A stretch of DNA of 64,000 nucleotides from assembly GCA_965649765.1 (NCBI GenBank), contig OZ287749.1:12710001-12774000 (forward strand), read 5' to 3'. The DNA comes from Bispira polyomma (Eukaryota). The notes beneath the pieces were generated by a model. It was not told where the DNA came from. It made no database searches and worked only from the letters and a program-made list of their open reading frames with translations. Positions 6,080 through 55,325 of this stretch are shown here, piece by piece (position 1 is the first letter of the stretch; the number at the start of each line of letters is the position of its first letter). Position numbers and translations under genes: made by a program.

Positions 6080-9000
6080 ATTAAAGAGCGTCTTCATGTT
6101 GACCAAATTTCTTTAAATGTGTCTTCCCTTCCTTTTTCTTTATTTACATAATATTCATTTTGGTAGATATGTTCAAGTTTTTGTTAAGGTATGGAAGTTT
6201 AATTTTTCTTTGTTTATATCACATGAGAAAATATAATGTTTAGTTGCTATTATAATAAGGTTGATTGGAAGGAATTTATTTCTATCATTGCTAATGGTGC
6301 CCAATATAATTTGCTTTGGATCAAAATTAACCTCAGTAGTGAAATAGTTTTTCAACCACTGCTTTAAATCACTCCATAGTTGTTGCACTGGTTGACAAAA
6401 GACAAATAAGTGCAATATTGTTTCACAGTCAGTATTGCACAATCTACAAATTTCTGATTCAGTAATGGACATTTTAAACAGTAAACTCCTTGTGCCAAGT
6501 ACAAAATGCAATATTCTATACTGAAACCAAATGAAATGATTATGTGTTATTGAATAAAGCATATATGAAATATATTTTTCCATGTCAATGCATCTATTTC
6601 TAAATTTAAATTTCCTTGCCATTTTTGCCTATACTTGGAAGAACTTTCTTTTTTATTGATTTCATTGTAAATATTTTGCAACCACTTTTACCTTGGATAA
6701 CCAGGGACAGATTAGGTATACAGTTGAACCTCTTATTATCCGACCCTCTATTATTCAAATATTTGATTTTACGGATTCAATTTCACTCTCCCAAACTTAT
6801 TTTTTATACTAAAATACCTCTTCTATTCTATGGACCTTCTATTATCCAAACAAATTCTCACTCTCCAAAAATGTCCGTAAAATAGAGGTTCTACTGTATA
6901 TGGTCTTTCTAACCTTGGCAAAACAGGTCTATTATTTTTCTTCAAAAATTTAGTAATATCTGTTTTTACTTGATAATACTCCAAAAAATTTATGTTGGAT
7001 ACATTATACATAGACTCGATTGTTTGTTTGCTTAACAGTACACCATTACTTTGTAGAATGTCACCTAGAACTGCTATACCTGTCTCATGCCATTTTCGTT
7101 TGTAAAAATTTGTTTTTGTAATCCTTTTGTTGTTCCATAAAGGTGTATTCAAGATTGTATCCTTATTACTTTCCATTGTGTGGTCAAATAAAGATGCACA
7201 AATTTGTAATATGTTTTTCCAAACTTCATTACTTACTTTTGATTGTAACAGTGTACACCAATATGAACCAAAGTCTGTTATATTTTTTATTGGACATTGT
7301 GTTAATTCAAAAGTTTTGACCATTGTGATTCCTGTGACTTCAGCAGTTTTCTGATCCAAGTGCTTTTTAAGCTTTGGCAAAGTTTTCAATGTTAACATTT
7401 TCAGTCCACCATTACAGTAATCATGACTAATTTGGATACGGTTAATTTTATCAGGTTTGCCATCCCACAAAAAACCATATAATATATCATTAAACTCTTT
7501 ATAGAATTGTCTACTTGACAGAGGAATTGACATGAATAAATGGTTCAACTTTGCAAGAATCAGTGTTTTTATTATTGTAATTTTACCAAGTGGAGTTAAT
7601 GGTCTGGTTTTCCAACTAAAATTAATTTTCTTTATTTAGTCAATAGCTTTTGAATAGTTCACACTAGGTATTTTTTTCAAATTAATATCAAAATCCAGTG
7701 CTAATAAGGTAAATTCTTCAGTGCTTCAATCAAAACTATAGTTGCATTTAAATTTATCTTTCGAATGTTTTTTCCTTCCAATCCAGACAAGTTTTGTTTT
7801 ACTAAAATTCATTTTCAGTCCCGATATTGTTCCAAATTTTTTTAATTAATTTAGTACTGCAGTTAAGAAGCTCTCTGAACCATCAAGAATTAGCGTGGTA
7901 TCATCGGCAAATTGTGTTACTTTAAATTCAGTTTGTTTTATGGTTAAGCCTTTGATCTCTTTATTATTTTCAAGTAACAGATATAAAATTTGACATAGTA
8001 TAAATAAATATGGGCCAATGTATCACCTTGTTTGCAACCTCTTTCTATGTTAAAAAAAGTCCTGAGGCTTTAAATGCCGTGTTAAACAGTGTTACCCATT
8101 TGATAAATTTTTCAGTAAATCTATTTTTCAGTAAAAGTATTTCAGAACACTACCCAAACATTTACATGAAATCGAATCCAAGGCCTTCTCGAAATCTATA
8201 AGCATTAGTAGTCCATCAATGTTATTATTTTCTGTGTATTCATAATGTCATATATTGAACGAATGCTATCACCTATAAATCTACCTTCTAAAAAACCTGT
8301 TTGAGCCATTGAAATTAATTTTGGTAAAACAGTTTTCATGCGAGACGCTATAACACTTGACAATTGCTCAAAAATGTTAATGTTTCCCATTAAGTTATCG
8401 CTTTTTGAGAACAACTTTGCATAAAAACGCTTAACTTCATTGAGAATATCTTTTTGACATGTTAAGAAACCACCATTATCTACACGGAGTCTTCTCATAG
8501 TTTTGTCAATAAAATGTTTTCTTCTTAAGCCACAAAATATTTTGTTGGTTATTCTTTGGGCAAGAGGTGTTTTGCCAGAGAGCGTATCATGTAACCAGTT
8601 ATATTTATTTCTCTAATTGTTTTTAATTCTTTTTTCATTTGATCAAGTTCATCTAAATGGGTATTATTATTTTCTATTTGCCTTTTAAGTTTTTCCTCTT
8701 GTAAATGTTTTTTTTCTTTAAAATACTCGCAAACTTAATTGATTCTCCCCGAATTTTTAACAGTATCATTTCTAAGAAGGTGCTTTCAGAAACAGTAAAT
8801 CCAATTTTTGAGTCCTCCATATTATTCAGATACTCTGTGTTATAAACAGGTAATGCATACTGATGTTTTACTTTCTTTATGGCTGTGTTAATAATGTCTA
8901 TATAGTCTGAGTTTCTTAAGAGGCTGCAATTAAGGTGCCAAATTCCTTTACCCTCTCAAATTTGTTTATCAGTGAAGTTAACTCAACCGACGAGTGGTCA

Positions 9001-9670
9001 CTCCTATAACTTGATTTTATTACACAATTGTTTATGAAATCGGTCAATTTATTGGAAGTTATAAAGTAATCTTGCTTTACAGGATTGCGACGACACCAGG
9101 AGTATCTTTTTAAAAGTGGATTCCGATGTCTGAAAGTATCTATTAAGTCATGTGTTTTCATAAGGTCAAGCAAGGTTTTTCTTGACTGTGGGTTATTAAT
9201 ATTCACATAGTTACAACTATCTAACGAAGGGTTCAAAACTAGATTGAGATCACTACATATAAAGATATAAGTTTCATCCGATTTTTCAATATAGTCTCCG
9301 ATTGTTTTGAAAAATTGTGGACTATCCTTATTTGGTGCATATACATTGATGAGTCTTAGTGATATATCTTGTAATTGTATATCTACTAAGAGAAGGTTAC
9401 CTTCCAAATCTTTATCAATATTTTAAAATTTTGTATTCAAAGTTTTTCTTAATCAGAACTAGCACACCACGTGAATTTGTCTTGACACCATGGATTATTA
9501 TATCACAGTCATGGTGCGTTGTAATATCATTTCCATCCGATTCCAAGAGTGTCTTGTAGACATAAGATATTTGTAGCATTACTAAGAGAATAATTTATCA
9601 CATCAAATTTTTTTTTTATCTCTAATCCCTTGGAGATTTGCCGATGATACCTTAATCTTGTTATTCAGAT
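6080..9670 (-). pseudogene. L1/Tx1 ORF2: APE endonuclease, reverse transcriptase, C-terminal zf-RVT
   Basis: IKVSSANLQGIRD (APE start), LINVYAPN, SDLNLVL, DYF...SDHS (APE); QTGFLEGRFIGDSIR, QFADDTTLILDG at ~7880-7915 (RT); FLWDGKPDKI, GGLKM, CRLC..ETILHLFVFC (Zn finger); many frameshifts and stops. Confidence 0.9.
6721..6896. mobile_element. Tc1/mariner(pogo)-type MITE inserted in the LINE ORF2
   Basis: TA|cagttgaacctct ... agaggttctactg|TA: 13-bp TIR (1 mismatch) with TA duplication. Confidence 0.8.
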
Positions 9671-27074: not shown

Positions 27075-27702
27075 TGTTATTTCACAATGAGTGTGGCCTC
27101 AGAAAGTGTAAGTCACAGTACCCTGTTAACAGCCGTCTCCAAGATGGAACTACAGTCTGGAATCAAGGACATTAGAGCTTCTGATACACCAATGCCTAAA
27201 GACAAATTGTCTGATGAAACTCTGGATCTCCTGATGGCAGCCAGCAACAAACTGACCAGCCAGTTCACTGCACAAGACTTGGCAAGTGTACCTATTGCCC
27301 TCTGATCAAAAATAAGACAGAAGTAATAGAAAAATATCCAATGAAAGGATATTTATCACTGATCTCCCCAAACATGTTACTTGTGAACTAAGTGACATAG
27401 TATACTTAATCACATGTAGCAAGTGTGATAAGTACTTTGTTGGAGAAACAGGACACCCATTTAGGGCTAAGATTTATGAAGACAGACTATCTGTCTCTAA
27501 ACCAAAGGATAACAGAATCACCCCTGTATCTAGACATTTTACTAGTAAGGGACATTCTGTAAATAATATGCAATTCTCTATATTGGAATGGTGCTCCCTA
27601 AAATATAACACTGCCAAATCTGATCATATAAAAATGATAGAGAAATGGTGGATGTGGAAAATTGAGGCTATCCATCCAGTCGGAATTAACCAATTTATTT
27701 AA
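27075..27702 (+). mobile_element. Penelope-like element remnant: Zn-knuckle linker + GIY-YIG endonuclease, RT deleted
   Basis: CTRLGKCTYCPLI at ~27269-27307; frame from 27361: HVTCELSDIVYLITCSKCDKYFVGETGHPFRAKIYEDRLSV...PVSRHF...GHS...FSILE...EKWWMWKIEAIHPVGIN* (missing from the ORF track). Confidence 0.85.
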
Positions 27703-29568: not shown

Positions 29569-32500
29569 ATGAGTGATTTGTGTTCAAAGCAGTCTCATGG
29601 TGGAGATGAACAGGAATATATTTTAATACAACAGACTGATACACAAAGGTTGGACACTGATGACACCACCGTGTTTATGGGAGCCAGTGGTTCTGGTGAC
29701 TACGACATAGTAAAGGCTCTTATACAGCAAGGTGTGGATGTGAACCATTGTGACACAGATGGTGATACTGCTGTTCATCGTGCAGCTCAGAAAGGCCACT
29801 TAGATATCTTAAAACTGTTACAGGAAAATGGAGCAAACATAAAAGTACTAAACAATAATGGTCTTAATACCATAATCTTAGCATCATTTGATTCAGGAGA
29901 CAGTGAAACTCTGAAGTAGTTGATAGAACAAGGTGTTGACGTAAACCAGTGTGCCACAGATGGTTGTACTGCTGTTCATTATGCAGCTCAGAAGGGTCAC
30001 AAGGATGTCTTAAAACTCTTACAGGAAAATGGAGCAAACGTAAAAGTACTAAGCAATGATGGTGATAATCCCATAATGTCAACATCACTGGGTTCAGGAG
30101 ACTGTGAAACTCTGAAGTGGTTGATAGAACAAGGTGTTGACGTAAACCAGTGTGACACAGACGGTTGTACTGCTGTTCATTATGCAGCTCAGAAGGGTCA
30201 CAAGGATGTCTTAAAACTCTTACAGGAAAATGGAGCAAACGTAAAGGTACTAAAACATAATGGTGAAAATCCCATCATGTCAGCATCATGGGATTCAGGA
30301 GACTGTGAAACTCTGAAGTGGTTGATAGAACAAGGTGTTGACGTAAACCAGTGTGACACAGACGGTTGTACTGCTGTTCATTATGCAGCTCAGAAGGGTC
30401 ACAAGGATGTCTTAAAACTCTTACAGGAAAATGGAGCAAACGTAAAGGTACTAAGCAATAATGGTGAAAATCCCATCATGTCAGCATCATGGGATTCAGG
30501 AGAGTGTGAAACTCTGAAGTGGTTGATAGAACAAGGTGTTGACGTAAACCAGTGTGACACAGACGGTTGTACTGCTGTTCATTATGCAGCTCAGAAGGGT
30601 CACAAGGATGTCTTAAAACTCTTACAGGAAAATGGAGCAAACGTAAAGGTACTAAAACATAATGGTGAAAATCCCATCATGTCAGCATCATGGGATTCAG
30701 GAGACTGTGAAACTCTGAAGTGGTTGATAGAACAAGGTGTTGACGTAAACCAGTGTAACACAGATGGTTGTACTGCTGTTCATTATGCAGCTCAGAAGGG
30801 TCACAAGGATGTCTTAAAACTCTTACAGGAAAATGGAGCAAACGTAAAGGTACTAAAACATAATGGTGAAAATCCCATCATGTCAGCATCATGGGATTCA
30901 GGAGACTGTGAAACTCTGAAGTGGTTGATAGAACAAGGTGTTGACGTAAACCAGTGTAACACAGATGGTTGTACTGCTGTTCATTATGCAGCTCAGAAGG
31001 GTCACAAGGATGTCTTAAAACTCTTACAGGAAAATGGAGCAAACGTAAAAGTACTAAGCAATGATGGTGATAATCCCATAATGTCAACATCACTGGGTTC
31101 AGGAGACTGTGAAACTCTGAAGTGGTTGATAGAACAAGGTGTTGACGTAAACCAGTGTGACACAGACGGTTGTACTGCTGTTCATTATGCAGCTCAGAAG
31201 GGTCACAAGGATGTCTTAAAACTCTTACAGGAAAATGGAGCAAACGTAAAAGTACTAAGCAATGATGGTGATAATCCCATAATGTCAACATCACTGGGTT
31301 CAGGAGACTGTGAAACTCTGAAGTGGTTGATAGAACAAGGTGTTGACGTAAACCAGTGTGACACAGACGGTTGTACTGCTGTTCATTATGCAGCTCAGAA
31401 GGGTCACAAGGATGTCTTAAAACTCTTACAGGAAAATGGAGCAAACGTAAAGGTACTAAAACATAATGGTGAAAATCCCATCATGTCAGCATCATGGGAT
31501 TCAGGAGACTGTGAAACTCTGAAGTGGTTGATAGAACAAGGTGTTGACGTAAACCAGTGTGACACAGACGGTTGTACTGCTGTTCATTATGCAGCTCAGA
31601 AGGGTCACAAGGATGTCTTAAAACTCTTACAGGAAAATGGAGCAAACGTAAAGGTACTAAGCAATAATGGTGAAAATCCCATCATGTCAGCATCATGGGA
31701 TTCAGGAGAGTGTGAAACTCTGAAGTGGTTGATAGAACAAGGTGTTGACGTAAACCAGTGTAACACAGATGGTTGTACTGCTGTTCATTATGCAGCTCAG
31801 AAGGGTCACAAGGATGTCTTAAAACTCTTACAGGAAAATGGAGCAAACGTAAAGGTACTAAGCAATAATGGTGTTAATCCCATCATGTCAGCATCATGGG
31901 ATTCAGGAGAGTGTGAAACTCTGAAGTGGTTGATAGAACAAGGTGTTGACGTAAACCAGTGTAACACAGATGGTTGTACTGCTGTTCATTATGCAGCTCA
32001 GAAGGGTCACAAGGATGTCTTAAAACTCTTACAGGAAAATGGAGCAAACGTAAAGGTACTAAAACATAATGGTGTTAATCCCATAATGTCAACATCACTG
32101 GGTTCAGGAGACTGTGAAACTCTGAAGTGGTTGATAGAACAAGGTGTTGACGTAAACCAGTGTAACACAGATGGTTGTACTGCTGTTCATTATGCAGCTC
32201 AGAAGGGTCACAAGGATGTCTTAAAACTCTTACAGGAAAATGGAGCAAACGTAAAAGTACTAAGCAATGATGGTGATAATCCCATAATGTCAACATCACT
32301 GGGTTCAGGAGACTGTGAAACTCTGAAGTGGTTGATAGAACAAGGTGTTGACGTAAACCAGTGTGACACAGACGGTTGTACTGCTGTTCATTATGCAGCT
32401 CAGAAGGGTCACAAGGATGTCTTAAAACTCTTACAGGAAAATGGAGCAAACGTAAAGGTACTAAAACATAATGGTGAAAATCCCATCATGTCAGCATCAT

Positions 32501-34886
32501 GGGATTCAGGAGACTGTGAAACTCTGAAGTGGTTGATAGAACAAGGTGTTGACGTAAACCAGTGTGACACAGACGGTTGTACTGCTGTTCATTATGCAGC
32601 TCAGAAGGGTCACAAGGATGTCTTAAAACTCTTACAGGAAAATGGAGCAAACGTAAAGGTACTAAGCAATAATGGTGAAAATCCCATCATGTCAGCATCA
32701 TGGGATTCAGGAGAGTGTGAAACTCTGAAGTGGTTGATAGAACAAGGTGTTGACGTAAACCAGTGTAACACAGATGGTTGTACTGCTGTTCATTATGCAG
32801 CTCAGAAGGGTCACAAGGATGTCTTAAAACTCTTACAGGAAAATGGAGCAAACGTAAAGGTACTAAAACATAATGGTGTTAATCCCATAATGTCAACATC
32901 ACTGGGTTCAGGAGACTGTGAAACTCTGAAGTGGTTGATAGAACAAGGTGTTGACGTAAACCAGTGTAACACATATGGTCGTACTGCTGTTCATTATGCA
33001 GCTCAGAAGGGTCACAAGGATGTCTTAAAACTCTTACAGGAAAATGGAGCAAACGTAAAGGTACTAAGCAATAATGGTGAAAATCCCATCATGTCAGCAT
33101 CATGGGATTCAGGAGAGTGTGAAACTCTGAAGTGGTTGATAGAACAAGGTGTTGACGTAAACCAGTGTAACACAGATGGTTGTACTGCTGTTCATTATGC
33201 AGCTCAGAAGGGTCACAAGGATGTCTTAAAACTCTTACAGGAAAATGGAGCAAACGTAAAGGTACTAAAACATAATGGTGAAAATCCCATCATGTCAGCA
33301 TCATGGGATTCAGGAGACTGTGAAACTCTGAAGTGGTTGATAGAACACGGTGTTGACGTAAACCAGTGTAACACAGATGGTTGTACTGCTGTTCATTATG
33401 CAGCTCATAAGGGTCACAAGGATGTCTTAAAACTCTTACAGGAAAATGGAGCAAACGTAAAGGTACTAAGCAATAATGGTGAAAATCCCATCATGTCAGC
33501 ATCATGGTATTCAGGAGACTGTGAAACTCTGAAGTGGTTGATAGAACAAGGTGTTGACGTAAACCAGTGTAACACAGATGGTTGTACTGCTGTTCATTAT
33601 GCAGCTCATAAGGGTCACAAGGATGTCTTAAAACTCTTACAGGAAAATGGAGCAAACGTAAAGGTACTAAGCAATAATGGTGAAAATCCCATCATGTCAG
33701 CATCATGGTATTCAGGAGACTGTGAAACTCTGAAGTGGTTGATAGAACAAGGTGTTGACGTAAACCAGTGTAACACAGATGGTTGTACTGCTGTTCATTA
33801 TGCAGCTCAGAAGGGTCACAAGGATGTCTTAAAACTCTTACAGGAAAATGGAGCAAACGTAAAGGTACTAAGCAATAATGGTGAAAATCCCATCATGTCA
33901 GCATCATGGGATTCAGGAGAGTGTGAAACTCTGAAGTGGTTGATAGAACAAGGTGTTGACGTAAACCAGTGTAACACAGATGGTTGTACTGCTGTTCATT
34001 ATGCAGCTCAGAAGGGTCACAAGGATGTCTTAAAACTCTTACAGGAAAATGGAGCAAACGTAAAGGTACTAAAACATAATGGTGTTAATCCCATAATGTC
34101 AACATCACTGGGTTCAGGAGACTGTGAAACTCTGAAGTGGTTGATAGAACAAGGTGTTGACGTAAACCAGTGTAACACATATGGTCGTACTGCTGTTCAT
34201 TATGCAGCTCAGAAGGGTCACAAGGATGTCTTAAAACTCTTACAGGAAAATGGAGCAAACGTAAAGGTACTAAAACATAATGGTGTTAATCCCATAATGT
34301 CAACATCACTGGGTTCAGGAGACTGTGAAACTCTGAAGTGGTTGATAGAACAAGGTGTTGACGTAAACCAGTGTGACACAGATGGTCATACTGCTGTTCA
34401 TTATGCAGCTCAGAAGGGTCACAAGGATGTCTTAAAACTCTTACAGGAAAATGGAGCAAACGTAAAGGTACTAAGCAATGATGGTAATAATCCCATCATG
34501 TCAGCATCACTGGGTTCAGGAGACCGAGAGACTCTCAAGTGGTTGATGGAGCAAGGTGTTGATGTGAACCATTGTGATTCATATGGATGTAGCGCCATCC
34601 ATTTAGCAACATATAAAGGCAAAGTACAGGTTTTAAAAATGTTACAAAAATATGGAGCTGATCTTAATGCACAAACAATTGATAAAAACAATGCCCTAGT
34701 TTTTTCAGTTCAGGGCCACAGCAATATAGAAACTGTGAAGTGGCTCATTGAGAATGAGATAGATGTTTTAAACAGGAATGACGAAGGTTTTAGTGCATTA
34801 CACTATGCAGCTGCCTGTGGACAAGATAACCTTCTGAAGCACATTGCGTCATATGACAGGAATGTTTCAGCTGAATCTAAGTTTAA
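29569..34886 (+). CDS. Roco gene coding exon 1: giant ankyrin-repeat exon
   Basis: ORFs 29569-29919 and 29920-34890 share a frame and are separated only by TAG; DG.TAVHYAAQKGH.DVLKLL.ENGANV ankyrin consensus; donor AA|GTAAGT at 34887. Confidence 0.85.
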
Positions 34887-37800
34887 GTAAGTTTTCTGAC
34901 CGATGCAATACATTTTATTTACCTTCTCAACAAATCTTCTTTAAAAGTGACTTAATAAAAATTGATTTTGAAAGCATTTTATTTAAATTTAAATTTATTT
35001 GTGTGATTATTTGTACTATTATTTGTGAAATCAAAATATTTTTTTAAATTAATATTTTGTATAAAAATCATCACTCTATTTTATTGATTATCAAGTAATT
35101 AGTTCTCTGTTTATATTTTCTAAAATTATCAAAATTTTTATGCTATGTTTTTGAATATTTATACTTCAGCTTAACCCCTTTGATGCTTGCCTCAGTCAAC
35201 AATCACAGTGACACTGTATCTCTTCTCCTGAAATGTGGAGCAGAAATAGGCAGAAAGGATGCCCAAGGGAAAAGTGCATTGGATTTTGCAGTAGAAAATG
35301 GGTGTAAGGATATTGTAGAAATACTGCAAACCCATGAACGTAAGTTTTAAGTTAAACCACTTACGTTACATCACATTTGAAGCCTTAAACTGGTTTTATC
35401 TTTATATCTAAACTAACAAAAAGAAGGCTATATCATTGTTTTATATGTCTCTTAAACACTTGATTTAGTTAAGAACGTTATAGTACTGTTAGAATTATAG
35501 TACGTTGTGATTACATTTATGGACGTATATTATACTATAACCATAAGACAAAAGTTCTAAATATTTCTAATGTTAATTAGTCATTATACTGACTTCATGT
35601 TTACAGCTGCATTGACTTTTGTATTGTGGGAGATACACATAGTAAAATCTCAATATGGTTGGTAATTGTTCTGTTACTGTTTGCAGTTTGTTCAAATAAT
35701 AAAAATTGAAGAAGAAATTCAACCAAAGATAATGTTATCGATCAGAATGCAGATCAATGCAGTTTCAATGTTTAATAGTTGCATCCTATCATTTCAGGTA
35801 CTGATGACAGTAAGGTCAAATGGACTGAAAACCAACGCCAACAACTTGTCACACTGTGTATATTAAGAATTTTGACCATTGGTGACCAAGGCATTGGTAA
35901 AACATCATTAGTGAAGACGATAATACTTGGAAAGATTCATAGAACAGGAGCAAATGATAGAACAGTAGTGTTTGATATATGGAGCTGGATACTAAAGAAT
36001 GGAAAGGTCATACTTGCATTTGACCTTGGAGGTCACCCTGGCTATTTTTATACCAGCCATTTTCTTCACTACAACTCTTCTCAGAATGTAGCACTGTTTT
36101 GCCAGGCAGTAACCTCTGATAATTACAACATATCTTTCCAGTGGCTGCAGGCAACACTTACCAGATCTCCAAAGTGCATGGTTATCCCAGTGTTAACCAA
36201 AGCAGATGAAGTTTCACTTGGCCAAATACCACAAAGAGTGGACAAATTCACTGAGGAGATAAAAGCAAAATTGAAACATGAAATAGATGTTTTGGAAAAG
36301 GTCATTACTGATATTTGTGATGATGATGATGATGATGAGAAATTTACCAGAAGCAAGATGGAAACTTATCAATCTTTGTATGATAACTTTGAAAGAAGAT
36401 TATTTGTTACATCAATGCAAGAAGATAATCCATTCAGTGAGAACCTAATAAAATTAAGCCAGTACATAGAAGATCTCAGTGTAAAGGACATGTATCAGGT
36501 TGAAATGCCGAAAGTCTATGTGGACTTTTATTCTCAATTTGGCAAAATGGGTACAATAGCAGATGTTGCAAAGAAGGTGAAACAAAGTGCAACAGCGGAT
36601 AAGAGAAGACCAGAAATAAATCTCAATCTTAAGACAACATTAGAAGTAAAGAAAACAGAAATAGCATCCACAGGTAATCAGATCCTCATTGAAGAGGATG
36701 CAAATGCCCACAATAAAACAGATGAAACTCGAAACATGGCTTCTGATAATACATGTGTATCAAACTACTCTTCAACCAGTCAGCAAATATCTGAAATCCA
36801 GATAAAAAAGTCACCTAAATATGCAGAACCGTTTGTTTCGGATAGCATACCCATGTTAATTAAAGAAGGAAAGATTGTTTCATTCACTGATGCTGCTGAG
36901 TTATATACAAAATTATCTAAGCAATATCCAGGATCTTGTGCTGATATGAAAACTTGTTTACAGCAATTGCACAGCTATGGCATGGCTCTTTGGTTTCAAG
37001 GGAATCCACATATTGAAAAATACATTTTTTTCGACTTTGACTTTTTTAAAGGTCTCTTGAGTACTTTGTTTCACCATGAAGCACTGGACGTTCCTTTCAA
37101 CAAAATAGGGAAGATATTACGAAGGGAGCTTTTTGGCGATGAGGAAGATATCTACAAGTTGTCTATAGAAAGAGTGAGAAGGACAGGTCTGGTCAGCAAG
37201 TCTTTACTGAAGGTGTTTCTGCACAATAGGGACTTTGATGAAGAGGCAGAAACTGTTGCACAGTTGCTTCAACACTTGAATATTGCATATGACTTTGGTC
37301 ATCCAGCTGGCATGGAGTCATCATTGTTTATTCCTTGGTTTGTTGATCACAAAGACATTCCAACTGACATTAGAGACAATATTCCACACCTGGGTGTCTG
37401 TAGCCAAGATGAATTGGCTCTGACCTTTCAACTCAAAGGAAGCATTCCAAGCACTTATTGGCACCAATTTTGTGTGGAGGTTATGTGTAAACTCTATGAT
37501 GTATCAGAGACACAACAACGAATCGTGTTCAGAAATGGTTTGTGGGCAATGGTGGACAACTTGTCTCTTTTTGTACATTTGATGGAGAATTCCTTGAAGG
37601 TCAACATCAGAGGAAAGGTAGAAACTGATACAGTCCACCGAGTGTGGGAATTAGCAGATACCATTTGCAACATAATGCTCAAACTGATAAAGACCTGGTG
37701 GCCTGGGCTAATACCTAGTATAACAGTAGACTGCTCACATTGTCACCTGAGAAACCTTCGTCCATCAGATGTTGATCAAATCCATCAGTGGCTACTACGT

Positions 37801-40562
37801 AAGATGCTAGGAGTAGAAAATAATGTTATTGAAGCTAGATGTCCCTTGGCATCAGCCACCATGGCTGTTCCATCTTTGTTTGTCAGACCTCCGTCAAAAG
37901 GTATTTGATATATCTATAGAGATGTGTATATGTATCTAAATAGTCAAAAAGTATAGGTTTTCAGGTAATAAGGTATAGATTTAGAATAGACTGAGTTATT
38001 AGCTTTACATTTGGTGTTGATTATTCATAAAATAATCTCACATGCAGTATAATAAAGTACTGTATAAGCAACTATTTTCATATATAAGTATTTAAATGTG
38101 TTACTGTTAGCATATAACAATAAATATTGTATATAAAATGTTGTGTATGCTAGTGACATTTGCACCAGTGTGAAATGAATTTCAGATCGAGCAGTTGCAA
38201 AGAAACAGGTTGCCTACTTAAGGAAGTACTTGAAGTCCAATGCTCAGAATGTAAGAATTTTAGCAAACTTTTACTCGAAAAATTATAATCGGTTTAATAT
38301 ACCAAATTTTTAAATAAAGTTAGTTCAACATATTGTAATTATACTGGCTTTATTGTTTACTTTTAAAGTTGATTTCAAAATAGGAAAAATTGGAAAGTTT
38401 TGATATGTCTCTTGTTGTGTTGTTTGTTTGGATAAAATTGTGGAAACTTCAGTCGTTCACAGCCATTGAAAAGTTTGGCCCTGGGACAGTTTTTCCGGGT
38501 TTTTTTTAACCCCTTTTTGTCTGTTATTAGGTATAAGGTTGCTAAAAGCTTTGTTAATTACAGAAAGTCATGTGCTTAGTTTACAAGAAATAATACAATA
38601 ATATGAAAAGTTTAAATTAATGTTTATTTTACATTTTACTTCAATCTGTCGTTTGGGTTTTAGCCATAGAAAATGTAAGTCTATAAAACATTGTTACAGA
38701 TAAAAGTCTCTGTGTAAAATAGAATTTAAAACATGCAAACGCATTGTTATCATCATTAAATACCTATAAATAAAAACGTATATCCATCAACCATAACAAC
38801 AAGCATTATTATGAATAGGCTTACAATTGATGTAACAAATTTATTTAAGAAACACATGACTTATTAGTGTGCAAATATTAAAGGTGTCTGCAGCAACGCA
38901 ATGAATGCAGCCGTTGCTTCGAAAATCACAAAATTTTTAACTCCTGTAATAATGCAGATACCAGATTAATAACAGTAATTTGACAGAATACTTGCAATCT
39001 TTATAAAGCTTTATAGTGTCATTATGTTTTCACAGGTGCATTTAATGAGCAGCAACATGGACCTGGGAGGACGCAATGAGTTGGCCAACTTTGAGAGTAT
39101 GCAATATTATATTTATTTTGAAAATTCTCTTCCAGGCTCATTGATTAAGGTAGTCTTAAATACGAGATATAGCTAATTGTGCTGGCTAGGGTATATTTCT
39201 TTTTGTATAAATAATACTACAATTGCCGATATGTGAAATATAAAAAAATCATTCCAGTACAAACTTTGCATCCTGGTCTAAATATATGCACCCTAATATT
39301 TGCTCTCTTTATCCTGGGATATTGTTGACCCAAGATGTATTATATTGATATTCCATTTTTCAAACTCACAGTGTCTCAAGAAATTTTTTTTTTCTGTATC
39401 ATGTGTAGGCAACTATGTCTCTTTTTTTTCTTTTTTGAGGTGTTCTTTGGTATTGTTTATTGTTTTATCTCTATTGAGTAATTGTGTAATGTTTTTTGTT
39501 TGTGTATTGTCATGTATTTTTTTGTGAAAAATTGTTTTAAAAAAAAAAAAAAAAATATATATATATTGATATTCCAGCTCTGTTGTTTTAATTAGCCATT
39601 CAGCAGACTGTGTTGTGTGAACTGGCCGACAGTATTGGTGTACGTTGGAAGAAAGTTGGTCGACGTCTGGGAATTCCTGAAGGCCACATTGATCAAATTG
39701 TGATGGACAATCCACATCATTCCTGGGACAGGATCTACTGCATGCTCGACAAATGGCAGACAGGACAACCCTGTGATGCTGAAGCAAAGGCAGCCATCTT
39801 GAAGAAAGCTTTGATTGCCAGCGGCTTCAGATTCAAAGATCCACAACCAGTGTCTGTGGAGGTAAAAGGGGTTGAACTTATATTGTATGAAAAGTATAGA
39901 ATGAAATTAAAATGATTGTTTCCTATATTACACATTTTTACAGCTTATAACTCTTTGACGATTGTGCCATTGAAGAAATGACTCATTTTTGCATCTAAAA
40001 TTATTATATTACTTCCCCGTTTTTTATCAATGTTAAGTTGTTTTGTGAGAAATCTGTCACATTGTGTTATCGATCCAATATTAAATAAAGATAGCTTATA
40101 TTCCCATTGCCAAAAACGTCATAAGCATCTACAATTAAAACAGAACCTCCTTTCGTAGTTTATATTATTATTACTGTGAAAATGACAAAACTTAGTAAGT
40201 GAAAATAAAAACCATTTTGAACAAATAATATCCAAATCTGTACTTACGAGATGGGTTCTAGAATGTGAAGCATGTCTATAAAGATCGCAAATTAAATTTC
40301 CCTTTTTATCAGATTTATTGCTATCTCTAACTAGGAAATGTCTTCAGTTACAAATAAAAACAGACATGCATGAAATCTTTTTTGTAATGTAACAAATCGG
40401 TCAAACATTTTGTATTTTATTATACTTTTCTTGTTTTTTTTTGAAAACCAGGGTTCATCAGACGTTTCTGAATACCCTGTAGGACCCAATCCAGCTGCAC
40501 ACAGACTTGTTCTACCTGCACGACTGGATGATAAAGTAAAAGAAGAGGGTACACCTGTCTAA
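29569..40562 (+). CDS. Ankyrin-ROC-COR-death domain (Roco family, DAPK-like order without kinase) gene; 7 coding exons; one in-frame TAG at 29917
   Basis: Exons 29569-34886, 35170-35339, 35798-37900, 38186-38250, 39036-39096, 39596-39861, 40452-40562 join in frame through GT-AG introns (phases 2,1,1,0,1,0); total 8094 nt; start codon and the small linker exons are predictions. Confidence 0.8.
29911..34533 (+). repeat. 23 x 201-bp coding tandem array (67 aa = two ankyrin repeats per unit)
   Basis: ctgaagt(g/a)g recurs every 201 bp from 29911 to 34333, then diverged ctcaagtgg at 34534; no indels between units. Confidence 0.97.
35170..35339 (+). CDS. Roco gene exon 2: last two ankyrin repeats
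   Basis: ttcAG|c...gaac|GTAAGT; LTPLMLASVNNHSDTVSLLLKCGAEIGRKDAQGKSALDFAVENGCKDIVEIL. Confidence 0.9.
35798..37900 (+). CDS. Roco gene exon 3: ROC GTPase + COR domain
   Basis: G1 GDQGIGKTS, G2 DRTVVFDI, G3 FDLGGH, G4 LTKAD, G5 FVTS; COR motifs LQQLHSYGMALWF, LLSTLFHH, LFIPWF, IPSTYWHQFCV, FRNG, CSHC; tttcAG| acceptor and G|GTATTT donor. Confidence 0.9.
38186..38250 (+). CDS. Roco gene exon 4 (linker)
   Basis: tttcAG|at...aat|GTAAGA; DRAVAKKQVAYLRKYLKSNAQN; phase-compatible. Confidence 0.7.
39036..39096 (+). CDS. Roco gene exon 5 (linker)
   Basis: ttttcacAG|gtg...gaga|GTATGC; VHLMSSNMDLGGRNELANFE; phase-compatible. Confidence 0.65.
39596..39861 (+). CDS. Roco gene exon 6: death domain
   Basis: VLCELADSIGVRWKKVGRRLGIPEGHIDQIVMDNP...DRIYCMLDKWQ...AILKKAL matches the death-domain pattern; donor gag|GTAAAA. 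Confidence 0.85.
40452..40562 (+). CDS. Roco gene terminal coding exon
   Basis: Pyrimidine tract + ccAG|ggt; GSSDVSEYPVGPNPAAHRLVLPARLDDKVKEEGTPV*. Confidence 0.65.
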   Translation, partial: GSSDVSEYPVGPNPAAHRLVLPARLDDKVKEEGTPV

Positions 40563-49064: not shown

Positions 49065-49845
49065 TTATTTTAATTATTATTATAAATTTTTAATGCACTT
49101 TATTGATGCTAGGCATCTTATAACACGCAACAGCAGAATTATTGGTCCAAACATTAAGTCCATAGACATTTCAAAGTTGCACGAGGGAAGCTAAGGTGGG
49201 TAGGCAAGATTAAAAAGATAGGTTTTAAGCTTTTCCCTAAAACCGATAAGTGTGTCAACTGATTTGAGGTCGAATGGGAGACTGTTCCATAAACGTGGAG
49301 CTGCAGTGGAGAACGCTCAGAATCCCGCCTTCCTGATTGGTCTGACTGAAGTGACAGAGAATCTGTTGCATCTCTTGCGGTTACTGAAGGAAAGAAGGGA
49401 GGCAAGGTAGGGGAGCTGTTGAGTGACTACAGCCTTAAAAGTAGTAACGTAAATCTTGAACAAAATGCGAGAATGAATGGGCAGCCAGTGTAATTTTTTG
49501 AGGTAAGGAGTGACGTCTGTGCGACAACCCAGGCGAAAAATGACCCTATATATGTAGTTTTGGATGGACTGGAGCTTTTTAATGTGTGACTTGTTTGCTC
49601 TATACAAGAGAGAGTTGCAGTAGTCGAGCCGGCTAATCACAAGGGCATTTGCCACAGTTATCGGTGTGTCCATGGACAGGTGGTTTCTGATTCTTTTGAT
49701 GTCACGTATATGGTAATAGCAGGAGCGACAGATGTTGGCAATATAAGTGTCGAACGAAAAGGCTGAATCAAAAGTGACACCCAGGTTTTTGGCATTTTCG
49801 GAAGGTAGTATGTCTTTTCCCAGCAAGGAGATGAGAAACATTGCT
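49065..49845 (-). mobile_element. L2-clade LINE 3' fragment inserted in the DIRS element
   Basis: AKNLGVTFDS, CYYHIRDIKRIR, LVISRLDYCNSLL, LKKLHWLPI; (AAT)n-like tail at ~49065-49083; the same 3' end recurs at ~41060-41170 and ~58580-58765. Confidence 0.9.
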
Positions 49846-52800
49846 AGTGAAAAAGTTCTAGAATATTTACAACAAACAATTCTAGTGAAAATATTCAAAA
49901 TTGTGATCTGAACTAGAGATACTACCTAAAGGCTCAGGTATTCCAGACTGTTGTGGAATCTATTGTTGAATGACTAGTTCAACAAGCTGACCCACCATGA
50001 TAGTACTATTAGAGACCTGGTAGAAAAATCTACTAGAACCCAGAAGCATGGCATCCCTGGTCACCCTGGAGCCATGAAAACCATCTGGCAATTGTAAGTT
50101 ACAAGCTTGACTGAAAAGTACAGAGGAAGCTTCATCAGTCTGCTTGCAAATCTGTGTATGTGTGGCCTATGGCCACATTGCAGGTTGCAGTGAACACCTC
50201 TTAATGGAGTAAACACCCTGTCTGAACATTCTTGTACCTCCTGGAAAGGAAGTAAACAATAAAATCAGAATACTAGTAAGCAAGGAATGAGTGTGGCTGT
50301 ATGTGCAACAAACCTAAGTATTTGTCCATACCATAACCCCCACCAGGGATACATATTCCTAGAATATGTATGACTCCTCCTAGCATACCAACTCTGGGGA
50401 AACCGTGAAAAGCACATTGTGTTCTTCCTGGTACAGAGGAAAACCAATAAGCAAACTGAGAATTTTTCCATCATTCCAGATGAGAGAACAAGATAGAATC
50501 AAGTAGAATGCTCAGATCAAGAGACTGATGATAATTCTATAAACATCAGAGATACCATTGGACAGGCCTGAAGTTACTCGTCGACAAAGGTATTTTCCAC
50601 CCCATGGAAGGCCAAATGGAAATACTGAATTCTATGGAAAGGGTCCCCCCTTGTTTGTTGACATCAGAACACAACCACGGTGTTGTCTGAGAAAAGAAGA
50701 ACACTATTGTTCTGAACTTGAAAACTCTTTAGAGCCAGTAACACAGACTTTATCTCCAACATAACTATGTGAAGATGTGCTTCCAAGGAGCTTCATAGAC
50801 CAATTACACTGATATTTTCTATGTGAGCTCCCCACCCCTTCTCCGAAGAATCCGAGAACAACAGGACATTGTCTTCTTGTGGATGAAATGGAACTCCTTT
50901 CAAAAACTGAGGATTGGAGATGCAACCTTTGAATGGAAATAATGTGATCCTTTTGTATGTGACATTACTCTTTTGTTGGGTATACGAATCTGTTTCCAAC
51001 GTCAAAATGGTAACCCCTCCCCCCCAAAAAAAAAAAACAAAAAAAAAATAAATAAAAACAAAACAAAAAACAAACAAAGGAACAAAGTAAGCGATTGTTG
51101 AAGCAACCTATTTCGAGAATTCATCCCGAGGTCCAAATCTTTGAGAAATCTTTCAAAAATATCAACCATTCACCTTTGATAAGAAACTTTCAGATCGACT
51201 CTGCTGTCTCTATTCTGAAGTTGGGTAAATTCCGAAAATTGTTGACCAAACTGTTATTGATCACTGAACTACACCTGATAAAGTTTTGAAACTATAGAAA
51301 CCTAGTGAAGTTATGCTTACAACAATACTATTGCCTTTGCTTTGTCAACACATGTGATACAGAATTCAGGTGAATCTGAAGATTTGTGGAATTAGCTCGA
51401 AATCCTTAAATAAACACGAATATCCACTTAAAATGTTTTCCATACCTAAAAGAATCATCATCCAGTTCCTTAAACTTTATGTATCCTTCTTTCACCCACA
51501 TCCACATGAAGAAGCAAACCTGAACTCGAAACTTGGCTGTCCTCCACTCCCGCAAAGAGAACATGAAAAGGAAGGAAGCAGCATTCGTTTGGTACATTCT
51601 ACTCTGTGAACTGTCAAAAGCCCCCAAAACCCTGAAAAATCCTCGACTACGGAAACTGCCGACTGTCAATATTGAAGTAGGACATCTTCTAAATCAGAAG
51701 CTGGAGAAAAATTTGAAGTTTTAATGAAGTTTCCTGGCAAACTGTGGGACGAACAGGAAAACTGGAACTGCTGACCAAAAGTCTAAAAGCTATATAAAGG
51801 AAGAGAATATTCCAGTCATGAGGCTCTGAAAATCTTAAAGCTGTGTTCCTGCTTCCTGAAGCCAGCATGGCCTGAAACTGAGGATCTACAGCTGTGAAAG
51901 GACAAGACAGGGTCTTTCCTGAAGCCAGCATGGCCTGAAACTGTGAATATATGGCTGTGAAAGGAAAAGACAGGGTCTTTCCTGGAAGCAACATGGCCTG
52001 GAACTGTGGATCTATGGTTGTGAAAGGACAAGACAGTGGAGTCAGCTACCTTGTGGAACCAGCATAGCATTCTGAAGAAGCTTTAGACCTGCCCTGGCAT
52101 CCATAGAGTCATAGACCTGCCATGGACTCAATGCAGCCATGGACCTGCCCTGGCTACCATGTAGTCGTGGAAACTGGCAAGTACCCCATGGAGTTGTTCT
52201 TGGCCTTTGTGATGATATTCACGGCTGTGTGGACCTTAAGAATCCTTGCCAGTAAGATCTACTGACCCACCATGGCCTCCTGACAAACTATAGCCCCTTG
52301 CAACCTCATGGTCTCCAGCAAAATTATGGGTTCCAGCCAAATCATGGTCTTCAGCCAAATACTTTCCCCCTCAGAATCCTGAAGAACCCTTAGATGAAGA
52401 GGTGTGGGTACTGGGCCCAGTAGTAGTAGTTGATTTGCCATGACTACAAAACATCTCCATCACTAAACAAGCCATAAGAAGCCTTTGCCCACAAAAATGT
52501 GACAGCAAAACATAAGCTTCAAAACATAAGCTTAAAAAAAAAAAAACCAACAGGGACTAGGCCCAAAAGTTGTAGATTTTCCATGGCTAAGTGATTTGGA
52601 ATAAGTGCTAGTCACCTACGACTGCAAAACATCTCCATCACTAAACAAGCCATAAGTAACCGACTCTGTTTGAAGGCGAAAACGTCGCCAACTTAATCTC
52701 TGATGAAGTGCTAGTACTGTAGCGATTAGTATGAAGACCACCTTAATCCAGAATGTTTCGACTAGGCAAAGATCACTTTTTGTCAACATCAACTGAACGC

Positions 52801-53010: not shown

Positions 53011-55325
53011 TCATGTTACATTTGTTACAACACTTTGACTTATTAAACTGATCACAAGCTCATCTGGTAGTGGGGGAAAGCCTGCTGCTGTGGCGGAAAA
53101 GCTGCTGTTGGAACTGTTGGAGTTGCTGCCCTTTCCTGGACCGTTGTTATTAGTTTGAACCACTCCTCCTTGAACTGCAGGAAGGAACGTTCTGGCAGTT
53201 TCTTCGTCTCCATGCTTAACCAGTTCATATAGGCTCCTCATATTCCCTTATCTTTGGGTTTCTTTGCCTCTGTCAGGATCCCTGTTATAGTCTGTTCCAT
53301 CCTCCCAATGGAATCGGCCAATTCAATACTGAACTGCCTCTCCTGTGTGTTTAGAGGATTCAAAAGCTGTTGATGACTTTGGTGAGGCCAAGTTGGATGA
53401 CTCCATGTCACCCTGATCTGTATCAGAGTGGGACAACACATCAGGACAACCACGAGGGGCGGCCCAATGTGAGGCTGATGCGATAGGCTTGAAGCCCGCA
53501 GACTTGTTGAGTTCGCGTCTGATGTGTGGCTTGAGGAACGAGAAGTTAGTCTTCACTAACTAGTCTGATATGTCGCTCGATCAATTCTGGGGCAGCAAAC
53601 TTGAGAAAATGTTCTTTAACTTTATATGGGATAAAAAACCGGATAAAATTAAAAGGTTAACACTAAAAAAGAGTTATCTCAAAGGTGGACTTAACATGAT
53701 TGATATTAATAGTTATATAAGTGCTCTAAAATCAACTTGGATACGTAGAGCGAACTCAGATATGGATGCACCTTGGGTAAAGGCAGCAGAATCCTATATT
53801 CAATCGCCTCTTAGTCTTGTAATGTTAGGATCTGGTTATGCAATAAATATTTCAAAGAAATGCAAGAACAAATTTTGGTCAGAGGTCTTAAGTGCATGGA
53901 GTAATGTACAAGCAAATATAAAGATTAAGGACATCACCGCAGCTTTAGCGAATCCTCTTTGGTATAACCTGAATATTTCAAAGGCCGAACTTTATTTACC
54001 ACATTGGTATAAAAGGGGCATTTTAACCCCTAGTGATCTGATGTATAATAATGGCGACTTTATTTCACAGGAAATAATACAGAGTGTATATGGCATTAAA
54101 ACTAACTTCTTAGAATATCATAGAGTGATAACATGTATACAAGGTTATCTAGAAAAACTGAAGCTACTGCGTTCAGAAAACGTAAAACCCAACTTTCCCA
54201 ATAACTTTAGACTTCTGTACAAGTCAAACAGTGGCAGTAAGGATTTCTACAAAATTCTGATAGATGCAAAGAGTCCTGATGAGTTATTCTACTCATACTG
54301 GGAGGACAATCTTGGAATAATTTTAACTAGTGCAGACTGGAAAAATATATATAAAATCTGCTTTAAAACAGTTAAAGACAACTACCTCATATGGTCACAA
54401 TATCGCACTTTGTATAGAATTTTAGGAACTAAGGGTCATCTGTGCAAAGTAAAAATTGCAACAGATGGAACTTGCAGCTTTTGTGGAACAGGCATAGAAA
54501 CAGTTCTGCATCTTTTTGTCCAATGTGAAAAGGTTAAAAAATTTTGGGGAGATATTGAAACTTTAATAAAGGTCAATCTTGAAATTGATTTCCCAATAAA
54601 TGGAAAATATATCATTTTTGGGATGTTTTCACAAAGTTCAAACATTGTAGTAAACATAGTTTATATTACGGCAAAAGTTTACATATTTTGGACGTCAAAG
54701 TCTACAAGCCAATTAAGCGTACAAAATTTCAGTAAATACTTACCTAAAATTGATTTAGAACAGGAATGTGTTGCCAGACTAGAACAAAGGTATGAAATAT
54801 TCCATAAGCAATGGAATCTGATTAATAAATTATTTTAGACACTAGGAAAATTATGTACGGAAAGGAAAAAAGAAAAGAAGATAAATAATTTTGGATCAAG
54901 AAATTTAAAGCTTGAAATAATAATGATAAAAAAAAAAGAAGCAAAAAAAAAAAAAAAAAAAAAAAAATATCATTTCAAGATAGCCACAAATAACACATGG
55001 TAATTTTGATTTATATATTGTGAAAGAGAAAATACCGTGTGCATAATAACTAAAAAAAAAGAAGAAATACATCAGTGTATAAAGTTTCTCATAAAACAAA
55101 ACAAAAAATCAGTATAAGCTAATATGAAAATATAGTTACTATAAAGCAAATACAATTTGTTGGTAAATGTGAATTTGCTGGTTATTGTTTTCTTCAGAGT
55201 AATGCTCACCCATTTTGCTGATAAATAATATTAGATTGAAAGATTGTAAATGTCTTCTATCTTTGTTTGGATTATTTATTATGGCTGTGGAGTTAGCTAA
55301 ATTAAATTTACACATAAATAAACAG

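What the first reader, a model, noticed from the sequence alone, without database searches (positions are those of the whole stretch)
29911..34533. Homogenised ankyrin array whose variation targets the binding face (natural DARPin-like library)
The 23 units are almost identical at DNA level, yet the differences are mostly non-synonymous and clustered: C[D/N/A]T[D/Y]G[C/R/H]TAVHYAA[Q/H]KG in repeat a and L[S/K][N/H][D/N]G[D/E/V/N]NPIMS[T/A]S[L/W][G/D/Y]SG[D/E] in repeat b. These are beta-turn and inner-helix positions, largely those randomised in DARPins. The outer helices are essentially invariant, and I see only about three synonymous variants (aaa/aag, ata/atc, gac/gat). This parallels the high-internal-conservation repeats of fungal NLR/HET proteins, where concerted evolution plus diversifying selection generates new specificities. 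I am not aware of it being described for an animal Roco-DD gene.
Basis: partly seen in the sequence, partly recalled or inferred. Interest (0 to 1): 0.85.

Follow-up and report, generated by a model that had tools for sequence, protein, structure and literature searches.

The report
Shuffled ankyrin array in Roco gene
An invertebrate gene family builds long ankyrin arrays whose copies are kept nearly identical except at the ligand-contacting face, as in fungal and brown-algal candidate immune receptors, but this particular copy has a premature stop codon just before the array, and no ligand or expression is known.

Summary
The array is real: 23 units of 201 bp (96% identical, 14 distinct) in a seven-exon ankyrin-Roc-COR-death-domain gene. 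Nine of 13 variable residues sit at DARPin-randomised hairpin/inner-helix positions (p=2e-5), and units are recombinant mosaics. But 'mostly non-synonymous' is what neutrality gives: in this array alone dN/dS is 1.3 (not significant), and the variation is a few linked blocks, not a library. The case for selection comes from relatives. Four sister genes, and three genes of another species, carry their own homogenised arrays. Pooled over eight arrays, dN/dS is about 2 at binding-face positions, 0.6 on the convex face and 0.4 elsewhere; two held-out arrays give only 1.2. An in-frame TAG at 29917-29919 cuts the frame before the array; the rest of the gene is intact and was under purifying selection. 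This is probably a recent null allele; public contigs could not confirm the stop. It works like fungal NLR ankyrin arrays and brown-algal LRR-ROCO genes; I found no paper on it in animals. The receptor role is inferred. The scan found this design before in a sister gene of this genome (s1-596209).

The parts
29569..34886 (+). Coding exon 1: start ATG, N-terminal cap, whole ankyrin array and C-terminal cap repeats
   Evidence: ATG aligns with the start of three sister genes; GT donor and phase check; Pfam Ank
29728..29928 (+). Diverged 5' unit (unit 0), outside the homogenised core
   Evidence: sister to the 14 distinct core/edge units
29917..29919 (+). In-frame TAG (Trp codon in all other units and all paralogs); ends the frame after 116 codons; next in-frame ATG at 30076
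   Evidence: not verifiable in public contigs
29929..34551 (+). 23 homogenised 201-bp units, each two ankyrin repeats (33 + 34 aa); the last one is a hybrid with the C-terminal cap
34552..34886 (+). Diverged C-terminal ankyrin repeats, orthologous among sister genes (dS 0.12 to the closest)
35170..35339 (+). Exon 2: two last ankyrin repeats
   Evidence: Pfam Ank; AG/GT and phase
35798..37900 (+). Exon 3: Roc GTPase (P-loop, switch I Thr, DxxG and TKxD motifs present) plus COR; open frame
   Evidence: Pfam Roc above cut-off, COR-B below cut-off; alignment; Atlas Roc-COR clusters
38186..38250 (+). Exon 4, linker (predicted)
   Evidence: AG/GT and phase only
39036..39096 (+). Exon 5, linker (predicted)
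   Evidence: AG/GT and phase only
39596..39861 (+). Exon 6: death domain
   Evidence: Pfam Death E=3.7e-9, above cut-off
40452..40562 (+). Exon 7, C-terminal tail and stop (predicted)
   Evidence: AG acceptor, phase and TAA

Best explanation
This is one member of a birth-and-death family of kinase-less ankyrin-Roc-COR-death-domain genes. In each member a two-repeat 201-bp unit inside a single exon is amplified and homogenised by unequal exchange or gene conversion (shown by sequence). The same exchanges recombine variant blocks between units (shown). Selection keeps the scaffold constant and favours amino-acid differences on the concave binding face (shown statistically at family level, weakly for this array). 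The most likely use is a variable intracellular recognition receptor: the ankyrin solenoid binds non-self or altered-self ligands, Roc-COR acts as the GTP/dimer switch and the death domain recruits an adaptor (inferred from architecture and analogy; untested). This particular allele is most likely a recent null because of the TAG at codon 117 (about 60%), carrying an array that was shaped while the gene was working.
For: Clustering 9/13, p=2e-5. Four-gamete failures 74/171 and repeated multi-unit blocks. Identity within arrays 0.91-0.96 versus 0.80-0.87 between sister genes; every array is one supported clade. Binding-face dN/dS 2.5 in the four sister arrays without the window (p=4e-5; 2.1, p=0.004 against local synonymous rate), 1.7 in another species (p=0.03), 2.2 over all eight (p=7e-7), versus 0.57 on the convex exposed face and 0.37 elsewhere; unit position 46 has 20 non-synonymous versus 3 synonymous changes. 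Many paralogs, several broken. Same architecture with own arrays in another assembly. Roc-COR exon open, dN/dS 0.44 on this gene's own branch. Same regime in fungal NLR ANK repeats (PMC4986451) and brown-algal LRR-ROCO genes (PMC3341825, PMC11378527).
Against: No RNA run holds the gene; no ligand, phenotype or population data. Whole-unit dN/dS in this array is 1.3, not significant. Two held-out arrays give only 1.2 at the binding face. The counts treat variants as independent although they travel in conversion blocks, and synonymous variation is also somewhat higher in the same segments. Only position 46 clearly passes a per-site correction (position 13 is marginal). The stop could not be checked in reads.
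Confidence: 0.55

Rival explanations
1. Neutral concerted evolution with relaxed constraint: the tandem exon amplifies by itself, purifying selection removes scaffold changes, and variants survive where ankyrin repeats tolerate them. No diversifying selection and no variable recognition.
For: Whole-unit dN/dS 0.5-1.6 in the six homogenised arrays; held-out arrays 1.2 at the binding face; young repeat copies generally evolve under relaxed purifying selection plus some positive selection (PMC5120217); this copy has a stop.
Against: Equally exposed convex-face positions are constrained (0.57) while concave ones exceed 1 in pooled data, also against the local synonymous rate (1.9, p=2e-4); the same positions (9, 11, 13, 21, 46, 54) vary independently in separate arrays.
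Confidence: 0.22
2. The diversifying pressure is real but the partner is the animal's own: a polymorphic self ligand (allorecognition, gamete or selfish-element conflict), or the array is a multivalent scaffold for repetitive cytoskeletal or membrane partners.
For: DAPK1, the known ANK-Roc-COR-DD protein, acts in autophagy, cell death and wound closure rather than pathogen sensing (PMC4104024); fungal counterparts include allorecognition genes (PMC12222747); one sister gene starts with a lipidation-like MGNCC motif.
Against: Rapid birth and death of many unlinked paralogs, and other Roco genes with variable repeats in this genome (other readers' unchecked notes), fit host-microbe conflict better; no direct evidence either way.
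Confidence: 0.15
3. This allele is functional in spite of the TAG (re-initiation at the ATG at 30076 giving about 2,500 residues), or the TAG is one allele of a heterozygote or a consensus error.
For: All six downstream exons are in frame with canonical splice sites, and Roc-COR shows purifying selection.
Against: The conserved start lies 116 codons upstream; re-initiation would drop the N-cap; no good donor site exists to splice the stop out; a stop this far above six junctions is a standard nonsense-mediated-decay substrate (established knowledge).
Confidence: 0.35
4. The array or its mosaic pattern is an assembly artefact.
For: Public contigs do not reproduce the internal order or the rarer variants.
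Against: No indels in 4.8 kb; the longest exact repeat is 694 bp, short against long reads; the 5' flank and the 3' terminal unit match public contigs at single-copy depth while consensus-unit contigs are roughly 11-18 times deeper; independent arrays of the same kind occur at other loci and in another species.
Confidence: 0.04

Closest known systems
Fungal NLRs with high-internal-conservation ANK repeats (Podospora Pa_3_8560, Pa_2_8180; Dyrka et al. 2014, PMC4986451; HNWD WD40 repeats, PMC2873952)
   Same: Repeats over 85% identical, concerted evolution, variable and selected sites on inner helices and beta-hairpins, nucleotide-switch domain plus death-signalling effector.
   Different: Switch is Roc-COR, not NACHT/NB-ARC; repeats are N-terminal; effector is a death domain; unit is a two-repeat 67-mer, 23 copies; animal host; repeat-number polymorphism among individuals not shown here.
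Brown-algal LRR-ROCO candidate immune receptors (Zambounis et al. 2012, PMC3341825; Teng et al. 2024, PMC11378527)
   Same: Roco GTPase with an N-terminal repeat sensor under shuffling and diversifying selection; high gene birth and death.
   Different: There each LRR is its own exon (exon shuffling, alternative splicing); here an ankyrin array lies in one exon and mixes by intra-exon recombination, and there is a C-terminal death domain.
DAPK1 (kinase-ANK-Roc-COR-death domain; PMC4104024 and established knowledge)
   Same: Order ANK, Roc, COR, death domain.
   Different: No kinase found upstream; about 54 mostly homogenised repeats instead of a few divergent ones; multi-copy fast-evolving family. 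Orthology to DAPK1 not tested.
DARPins (designed ankyrin repeat proteins; library positions from established knowledge, Binz et al. 2003)
   Same: Constant scaffold, capping repeats, variation at hairpin and inner-helix positions; best PDB matches are DARPins.
   Different: One natural polypeptide with about 54 repeats and few, linked alternatives per site; natural variation also uses positions that DARPins fix (the hairpin Asp, the residue after the conserved His).

Membership tests
Roco proteins | Roc GTPase domain with G1-G4 motifs | tested here: met
   Pfam Roc 31 bits, cut-off 27; motifs seen in alignment
Roco proteins | COR domain directly after Roc | tested here: met
   COR-B E=1.6e-4, below cut-off; 28 bits, above cut-off, in homolog L047; Atlas neighbours are Roc-COR clusters at 0.92-0.96
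DAPK1 family | N-terminal Ser/Thr kinase domain | tested here: not met
   No kinase hit among the window ORFs scanned; conserved ATG lies 53 codons before the first array-type unit in this and sister genes. A distant, finely split upstream kinase is not fully excluded.
DAPK1 family | ANK-Roc-COR-death domain order | tested here: met
NLR / STAND receptors | NACHT or NB-ARC ATPase | tested here: not met
   Central domain is a Roc GTPase
High-internal-conservation (HiC) repeat regime | Over 85% internal identity across at least 100 residues | tested here: met
   96% DNA identity over 23 units; at most 13 of 67 residues vary in the core
High-internal-conservation (HiC) repeat regime | Concerted evolution and recombination between units | tested here: met
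High-internal-conservation (HiC) repeat regime | Positive selection on the concave face | tested here: inconclusive
   Met when pooled (2.2, p=7e-7); weak in this array; 1.2 in two held-out arrays; counting method only
High-internal-conservation (HiC) repeat regime | Repeat-number polymorphism among individuals | tested here: inconclusive
   Unit/flank depth ratio about 11 in one sample and 16-18 in another, but contig depth is no copy number
Brown-algal exon-shuffling ROCO | One exon per repeat | tested here: not met
   Whole array is one open exon
Immune or non-self receptor (function) | Ligand binding triggers signalling or cell death | not testable with these tools
   No expression or functional data

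The most novel reading that the evidence does not exclude
The family is an animal repertoire of Roco-type intracellular receptors whose ankyrin arrays are reshuffled fast enough that unit number and order differ between individuals (possibly between cells), creating new specificities that signal through the death domain: an animal counterpart of fungal HET/NLR diversification on a GTPase switch.
Probability: 0.3. Interest if true: 0.82.

Novelty: new variant of a known kind. Interest (0 to 1): 0.55.

Why it matters
How invertebrates widen recognition without antibodies is an open question, and the function of kinase-less Roco proteins is largely unknown. Homogenised repeats are rare in animals (0.8% of ANK/TPR/WD repeats, PMC4986451). 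A family in which several unlinked genes independently show the fungal-type regime gives a concrete, cheap test (long amplicons across individuals and tissues) and a natural comparison for DARPin design. This copy is the weaker entry point because of its stop; the sister at C11:34.19 Mb is open in all parts seen.

Tried and rejected
Whole-unit dN/dS as evidence of selection: not significant, rejected. Array swap between paralogs: Roc and cap regions pair this gene with C11:34.19 Mb, whose array groups instead with C11:55.57 Mb; the AU test did not reject the flank-like grouping for arrays (p=0.13), so it stays a hint. An intron that removes the stop: no convincing donor. An upstream coding exon: stops in frame. 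Checking the TAG in public runs: contigs omit that segment and also an 8-copy variant, so uninformative. The spliced model was searched exon by exon by reference; the joined protein was not built for any search. Counting each distinct codon once across all paralogs saturates synonymous sites and has no power. Four literature searches found no description of an animal ANK-Roc-COR-DD family with homogenised arrays; the library lacks most subscription papers. The organism was not identified; 'worm' comes from another agent's note and was not tested.

Full report
Observation. The window holds one tandem array of period 201 at 29728-34575. Cut at the start of the ankyrin pair, there are 23 homogenised units (29929-34551) between a diverged 5' unit and diverged C-terminal repeats; 14 units are distinct. 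Each unit encodes two ankyrin repeats; the best sequence and fold matches are DARPins and ankyrin-B/R. A single-sequence model (mean pLDDT 62, so moderate) puts helices at about unit residues 15-22, 25-33, 48-54 and 59-67. The variable residues 9, 11, 13, 42-46 are therefore hairpin/loop, and 21, 52, 54, 55 are inner helix or its end.

What is and is not beyond chance. Using the DARPin library positions (established knowledge; register from the alignments), 9 of 13 variable residues fall among 14 of 67 positions (p=2.4e-5; simulation 0.0002). The excess of non-synonymous changes is not beyond chance: about 79% of sites are non-synonymous, dN/dS is 1.31 (p=0.34), and neutral simulations give three or fewer synonymous changes in 10-29% of runs. 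The variation is also modest. Common variants form a few linked blocks, mostly in repeat b, which have been recombined: 74 of 171 informative site pairs show all four gametes, and blocks of about three units recur at lags of 5, 6 and 11 units.

The gene. Seven coding exons with canonical splice sites and matching phases give 2,698 codons including the final stop: about 54 ankyrin repeats, Roc, COR, linker, death domain. I searched the exons one by one and left the joined protein out. The only interruption is TAG at 29917-29919, after 116 codons, where all other units and all paralogs have Trp. The start codon is conserved in three sister genes, no good donor lets the stop be spliced out, and the next in-frame ATG is at 30076. 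The Roc-COR exon is open, keeps its GTPase motifs, and has dN/dS 0.44 on its own branch since the split from its closest paralog (dS 0.17). So the gene was under purifying selection for most of that time, and the stop is recent, polymorphic or an error. Three public runs (two samples, contigs only) match the 5' flank exactly, and two of them show the 3' terminal unit at single-copy depth; consensus-unit contigs are roughly 11-18 times deeper. They do not show the segment with the stop, and they also drop an 8-copy variant, so they cannot settle it. No RNA run is on record.

The family. The genome has dozens of Roc-COR matches, several with stops or frameshifts, and at least five other loci with runs of the same 201-bp unit, from about 8 to about 43 units by match extent. 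Another assembly (ENA ERZ22147071, about 50% protein identity in Roc-COR) has the same exon layout and its own arrays, three homogenised and one divergent. Units are 91-96% identical within arrays, 80-87% between sister genes, and each array is one supported clade: concerted evolution, repeated independently in each gene.

Selection. Counting distinct codon changes within arrays, DARPin-type concave positions have dN/dS 2.5 in the four sister arrays without the window (p=4e-5; 2.1 and p=0.004 against the synonymous rate of the same segments), 1.7 in the other species (p=0.03; 0.07 locally) and 2.2 over all eight (p=7e-7). Exposed convex positions give 0.57 and the rest 0.37. Position 46 has 20 non-synonymous against 3 synonymous changes. 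The convex control matters: it argues against mere surface tolerance. Limits: variants move in blocks, so the p-values are optimistic; the two arrays analysed last as a hold-out gave 1.24 and 1.20 (not significant), although their framework contrast held (0.36, 0.28); the extra class 'other concave' was chosen partly after seeing data and is not needed for the result.

Mechanism. Shown: amplification, homogenisation and mixing of units inside one exon; constrained scaffold; family-level excess of amino-acid change on the binding face. Inferred: the solenoid is the sensor, Roc-COR the GTP/dimer switch (PMC4104024 for the general model), the death domain the output, and the driver is conflict with microbes. 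I put the evolutionary regime at about 0.75, the recognition-receptor role at about 0.5-0.55, and a null state of this allele at about 0.6.

Comparison. It is a Roco protein. It is not an NLR (no NACHT/NB-ARC), not DAPK1 as defined (no kinase found), and not an exon-shuffling ROCO of the brown-algal type (one exon). It works like the fungal high-internal-conservation ANK repeats, where selected sites also map to inner helices and hairpins (PMC4986451), and it joins that regime to the Roco switch known from brown algae (PMC3341825, PMC11378527). Concerted evolution of metazoan domain repeats is known, rare and linked to host-parasite conflict (PMC5100051). I found no paper on this family. The scan's notes record the same design in a sister gene of this genome (s1-596209), and the architecture and the stop on this window (s1-697653, s1-697752); these are unchecked notes and add no independent support.

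Verdict. Real, and a new variant of a known kind. Interest 0.55.

Noticed in passing
L034 (G000:C11, about 34.2006 Mb, minus strand): The closest sister gene starts MGNCC, a myristoylation/palmitoylation-like motif absent from the window's copy and the other sisters; its array ends in a three-unit higher-order repeat.
   Followed up: no
L034/L045 versus L043: The array of the C11:34.19 Mb gene groups with that of C11:55.57 Mb although its Roc exon and caps are closest to the window's gene; possible array exchange between loci (AU p=0.13, not proven).
   Followed up: partly
window 29929-34551, unit position 8: A cysteine at a DARPin-randomised position is nearly invariant in all nine arrays of two species; it may be structural, redox-sensitive or lipidated.
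   Followed up: no
L044 (G000:C11, about 54.27 Mb): This sister gene has lost its N-terminal cap repeat (leader fused into a unit) and has the short, most diverse array (7-8 units); its Roc G4 motif has Arg for Lys.
   Followed up: no
G000:C10:56048848-56057644: A longer array of the same unit (about 43 units by match extent) with no nearby Roc match among the scored hits; could not be fetched.
   Followed up: no
window 27331-27702 (+): An open stretch that looks by eye like a GIY-YIG endonuclease of a Penelope-like element, 2 kb upstream of the gene; no Pfam hit.
   Followed up: partly
window 6173-9407 (-), 49317-49898 (-), 53570-54838 (+): LINE retrotransposon remnants (zf-RVT and endonuclease Pfam hits; the 49.3-49.9 kb piece looks like a LINE C-terminus by eye).
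   Followed up: partly
ENA ERZ22147071 (L046-L051): At least six contigs of this assembly, filed as a metagenome assembly, carry intron-containing genes of the same family; they are probably DNA of a related host animal.
   Followed up: partly
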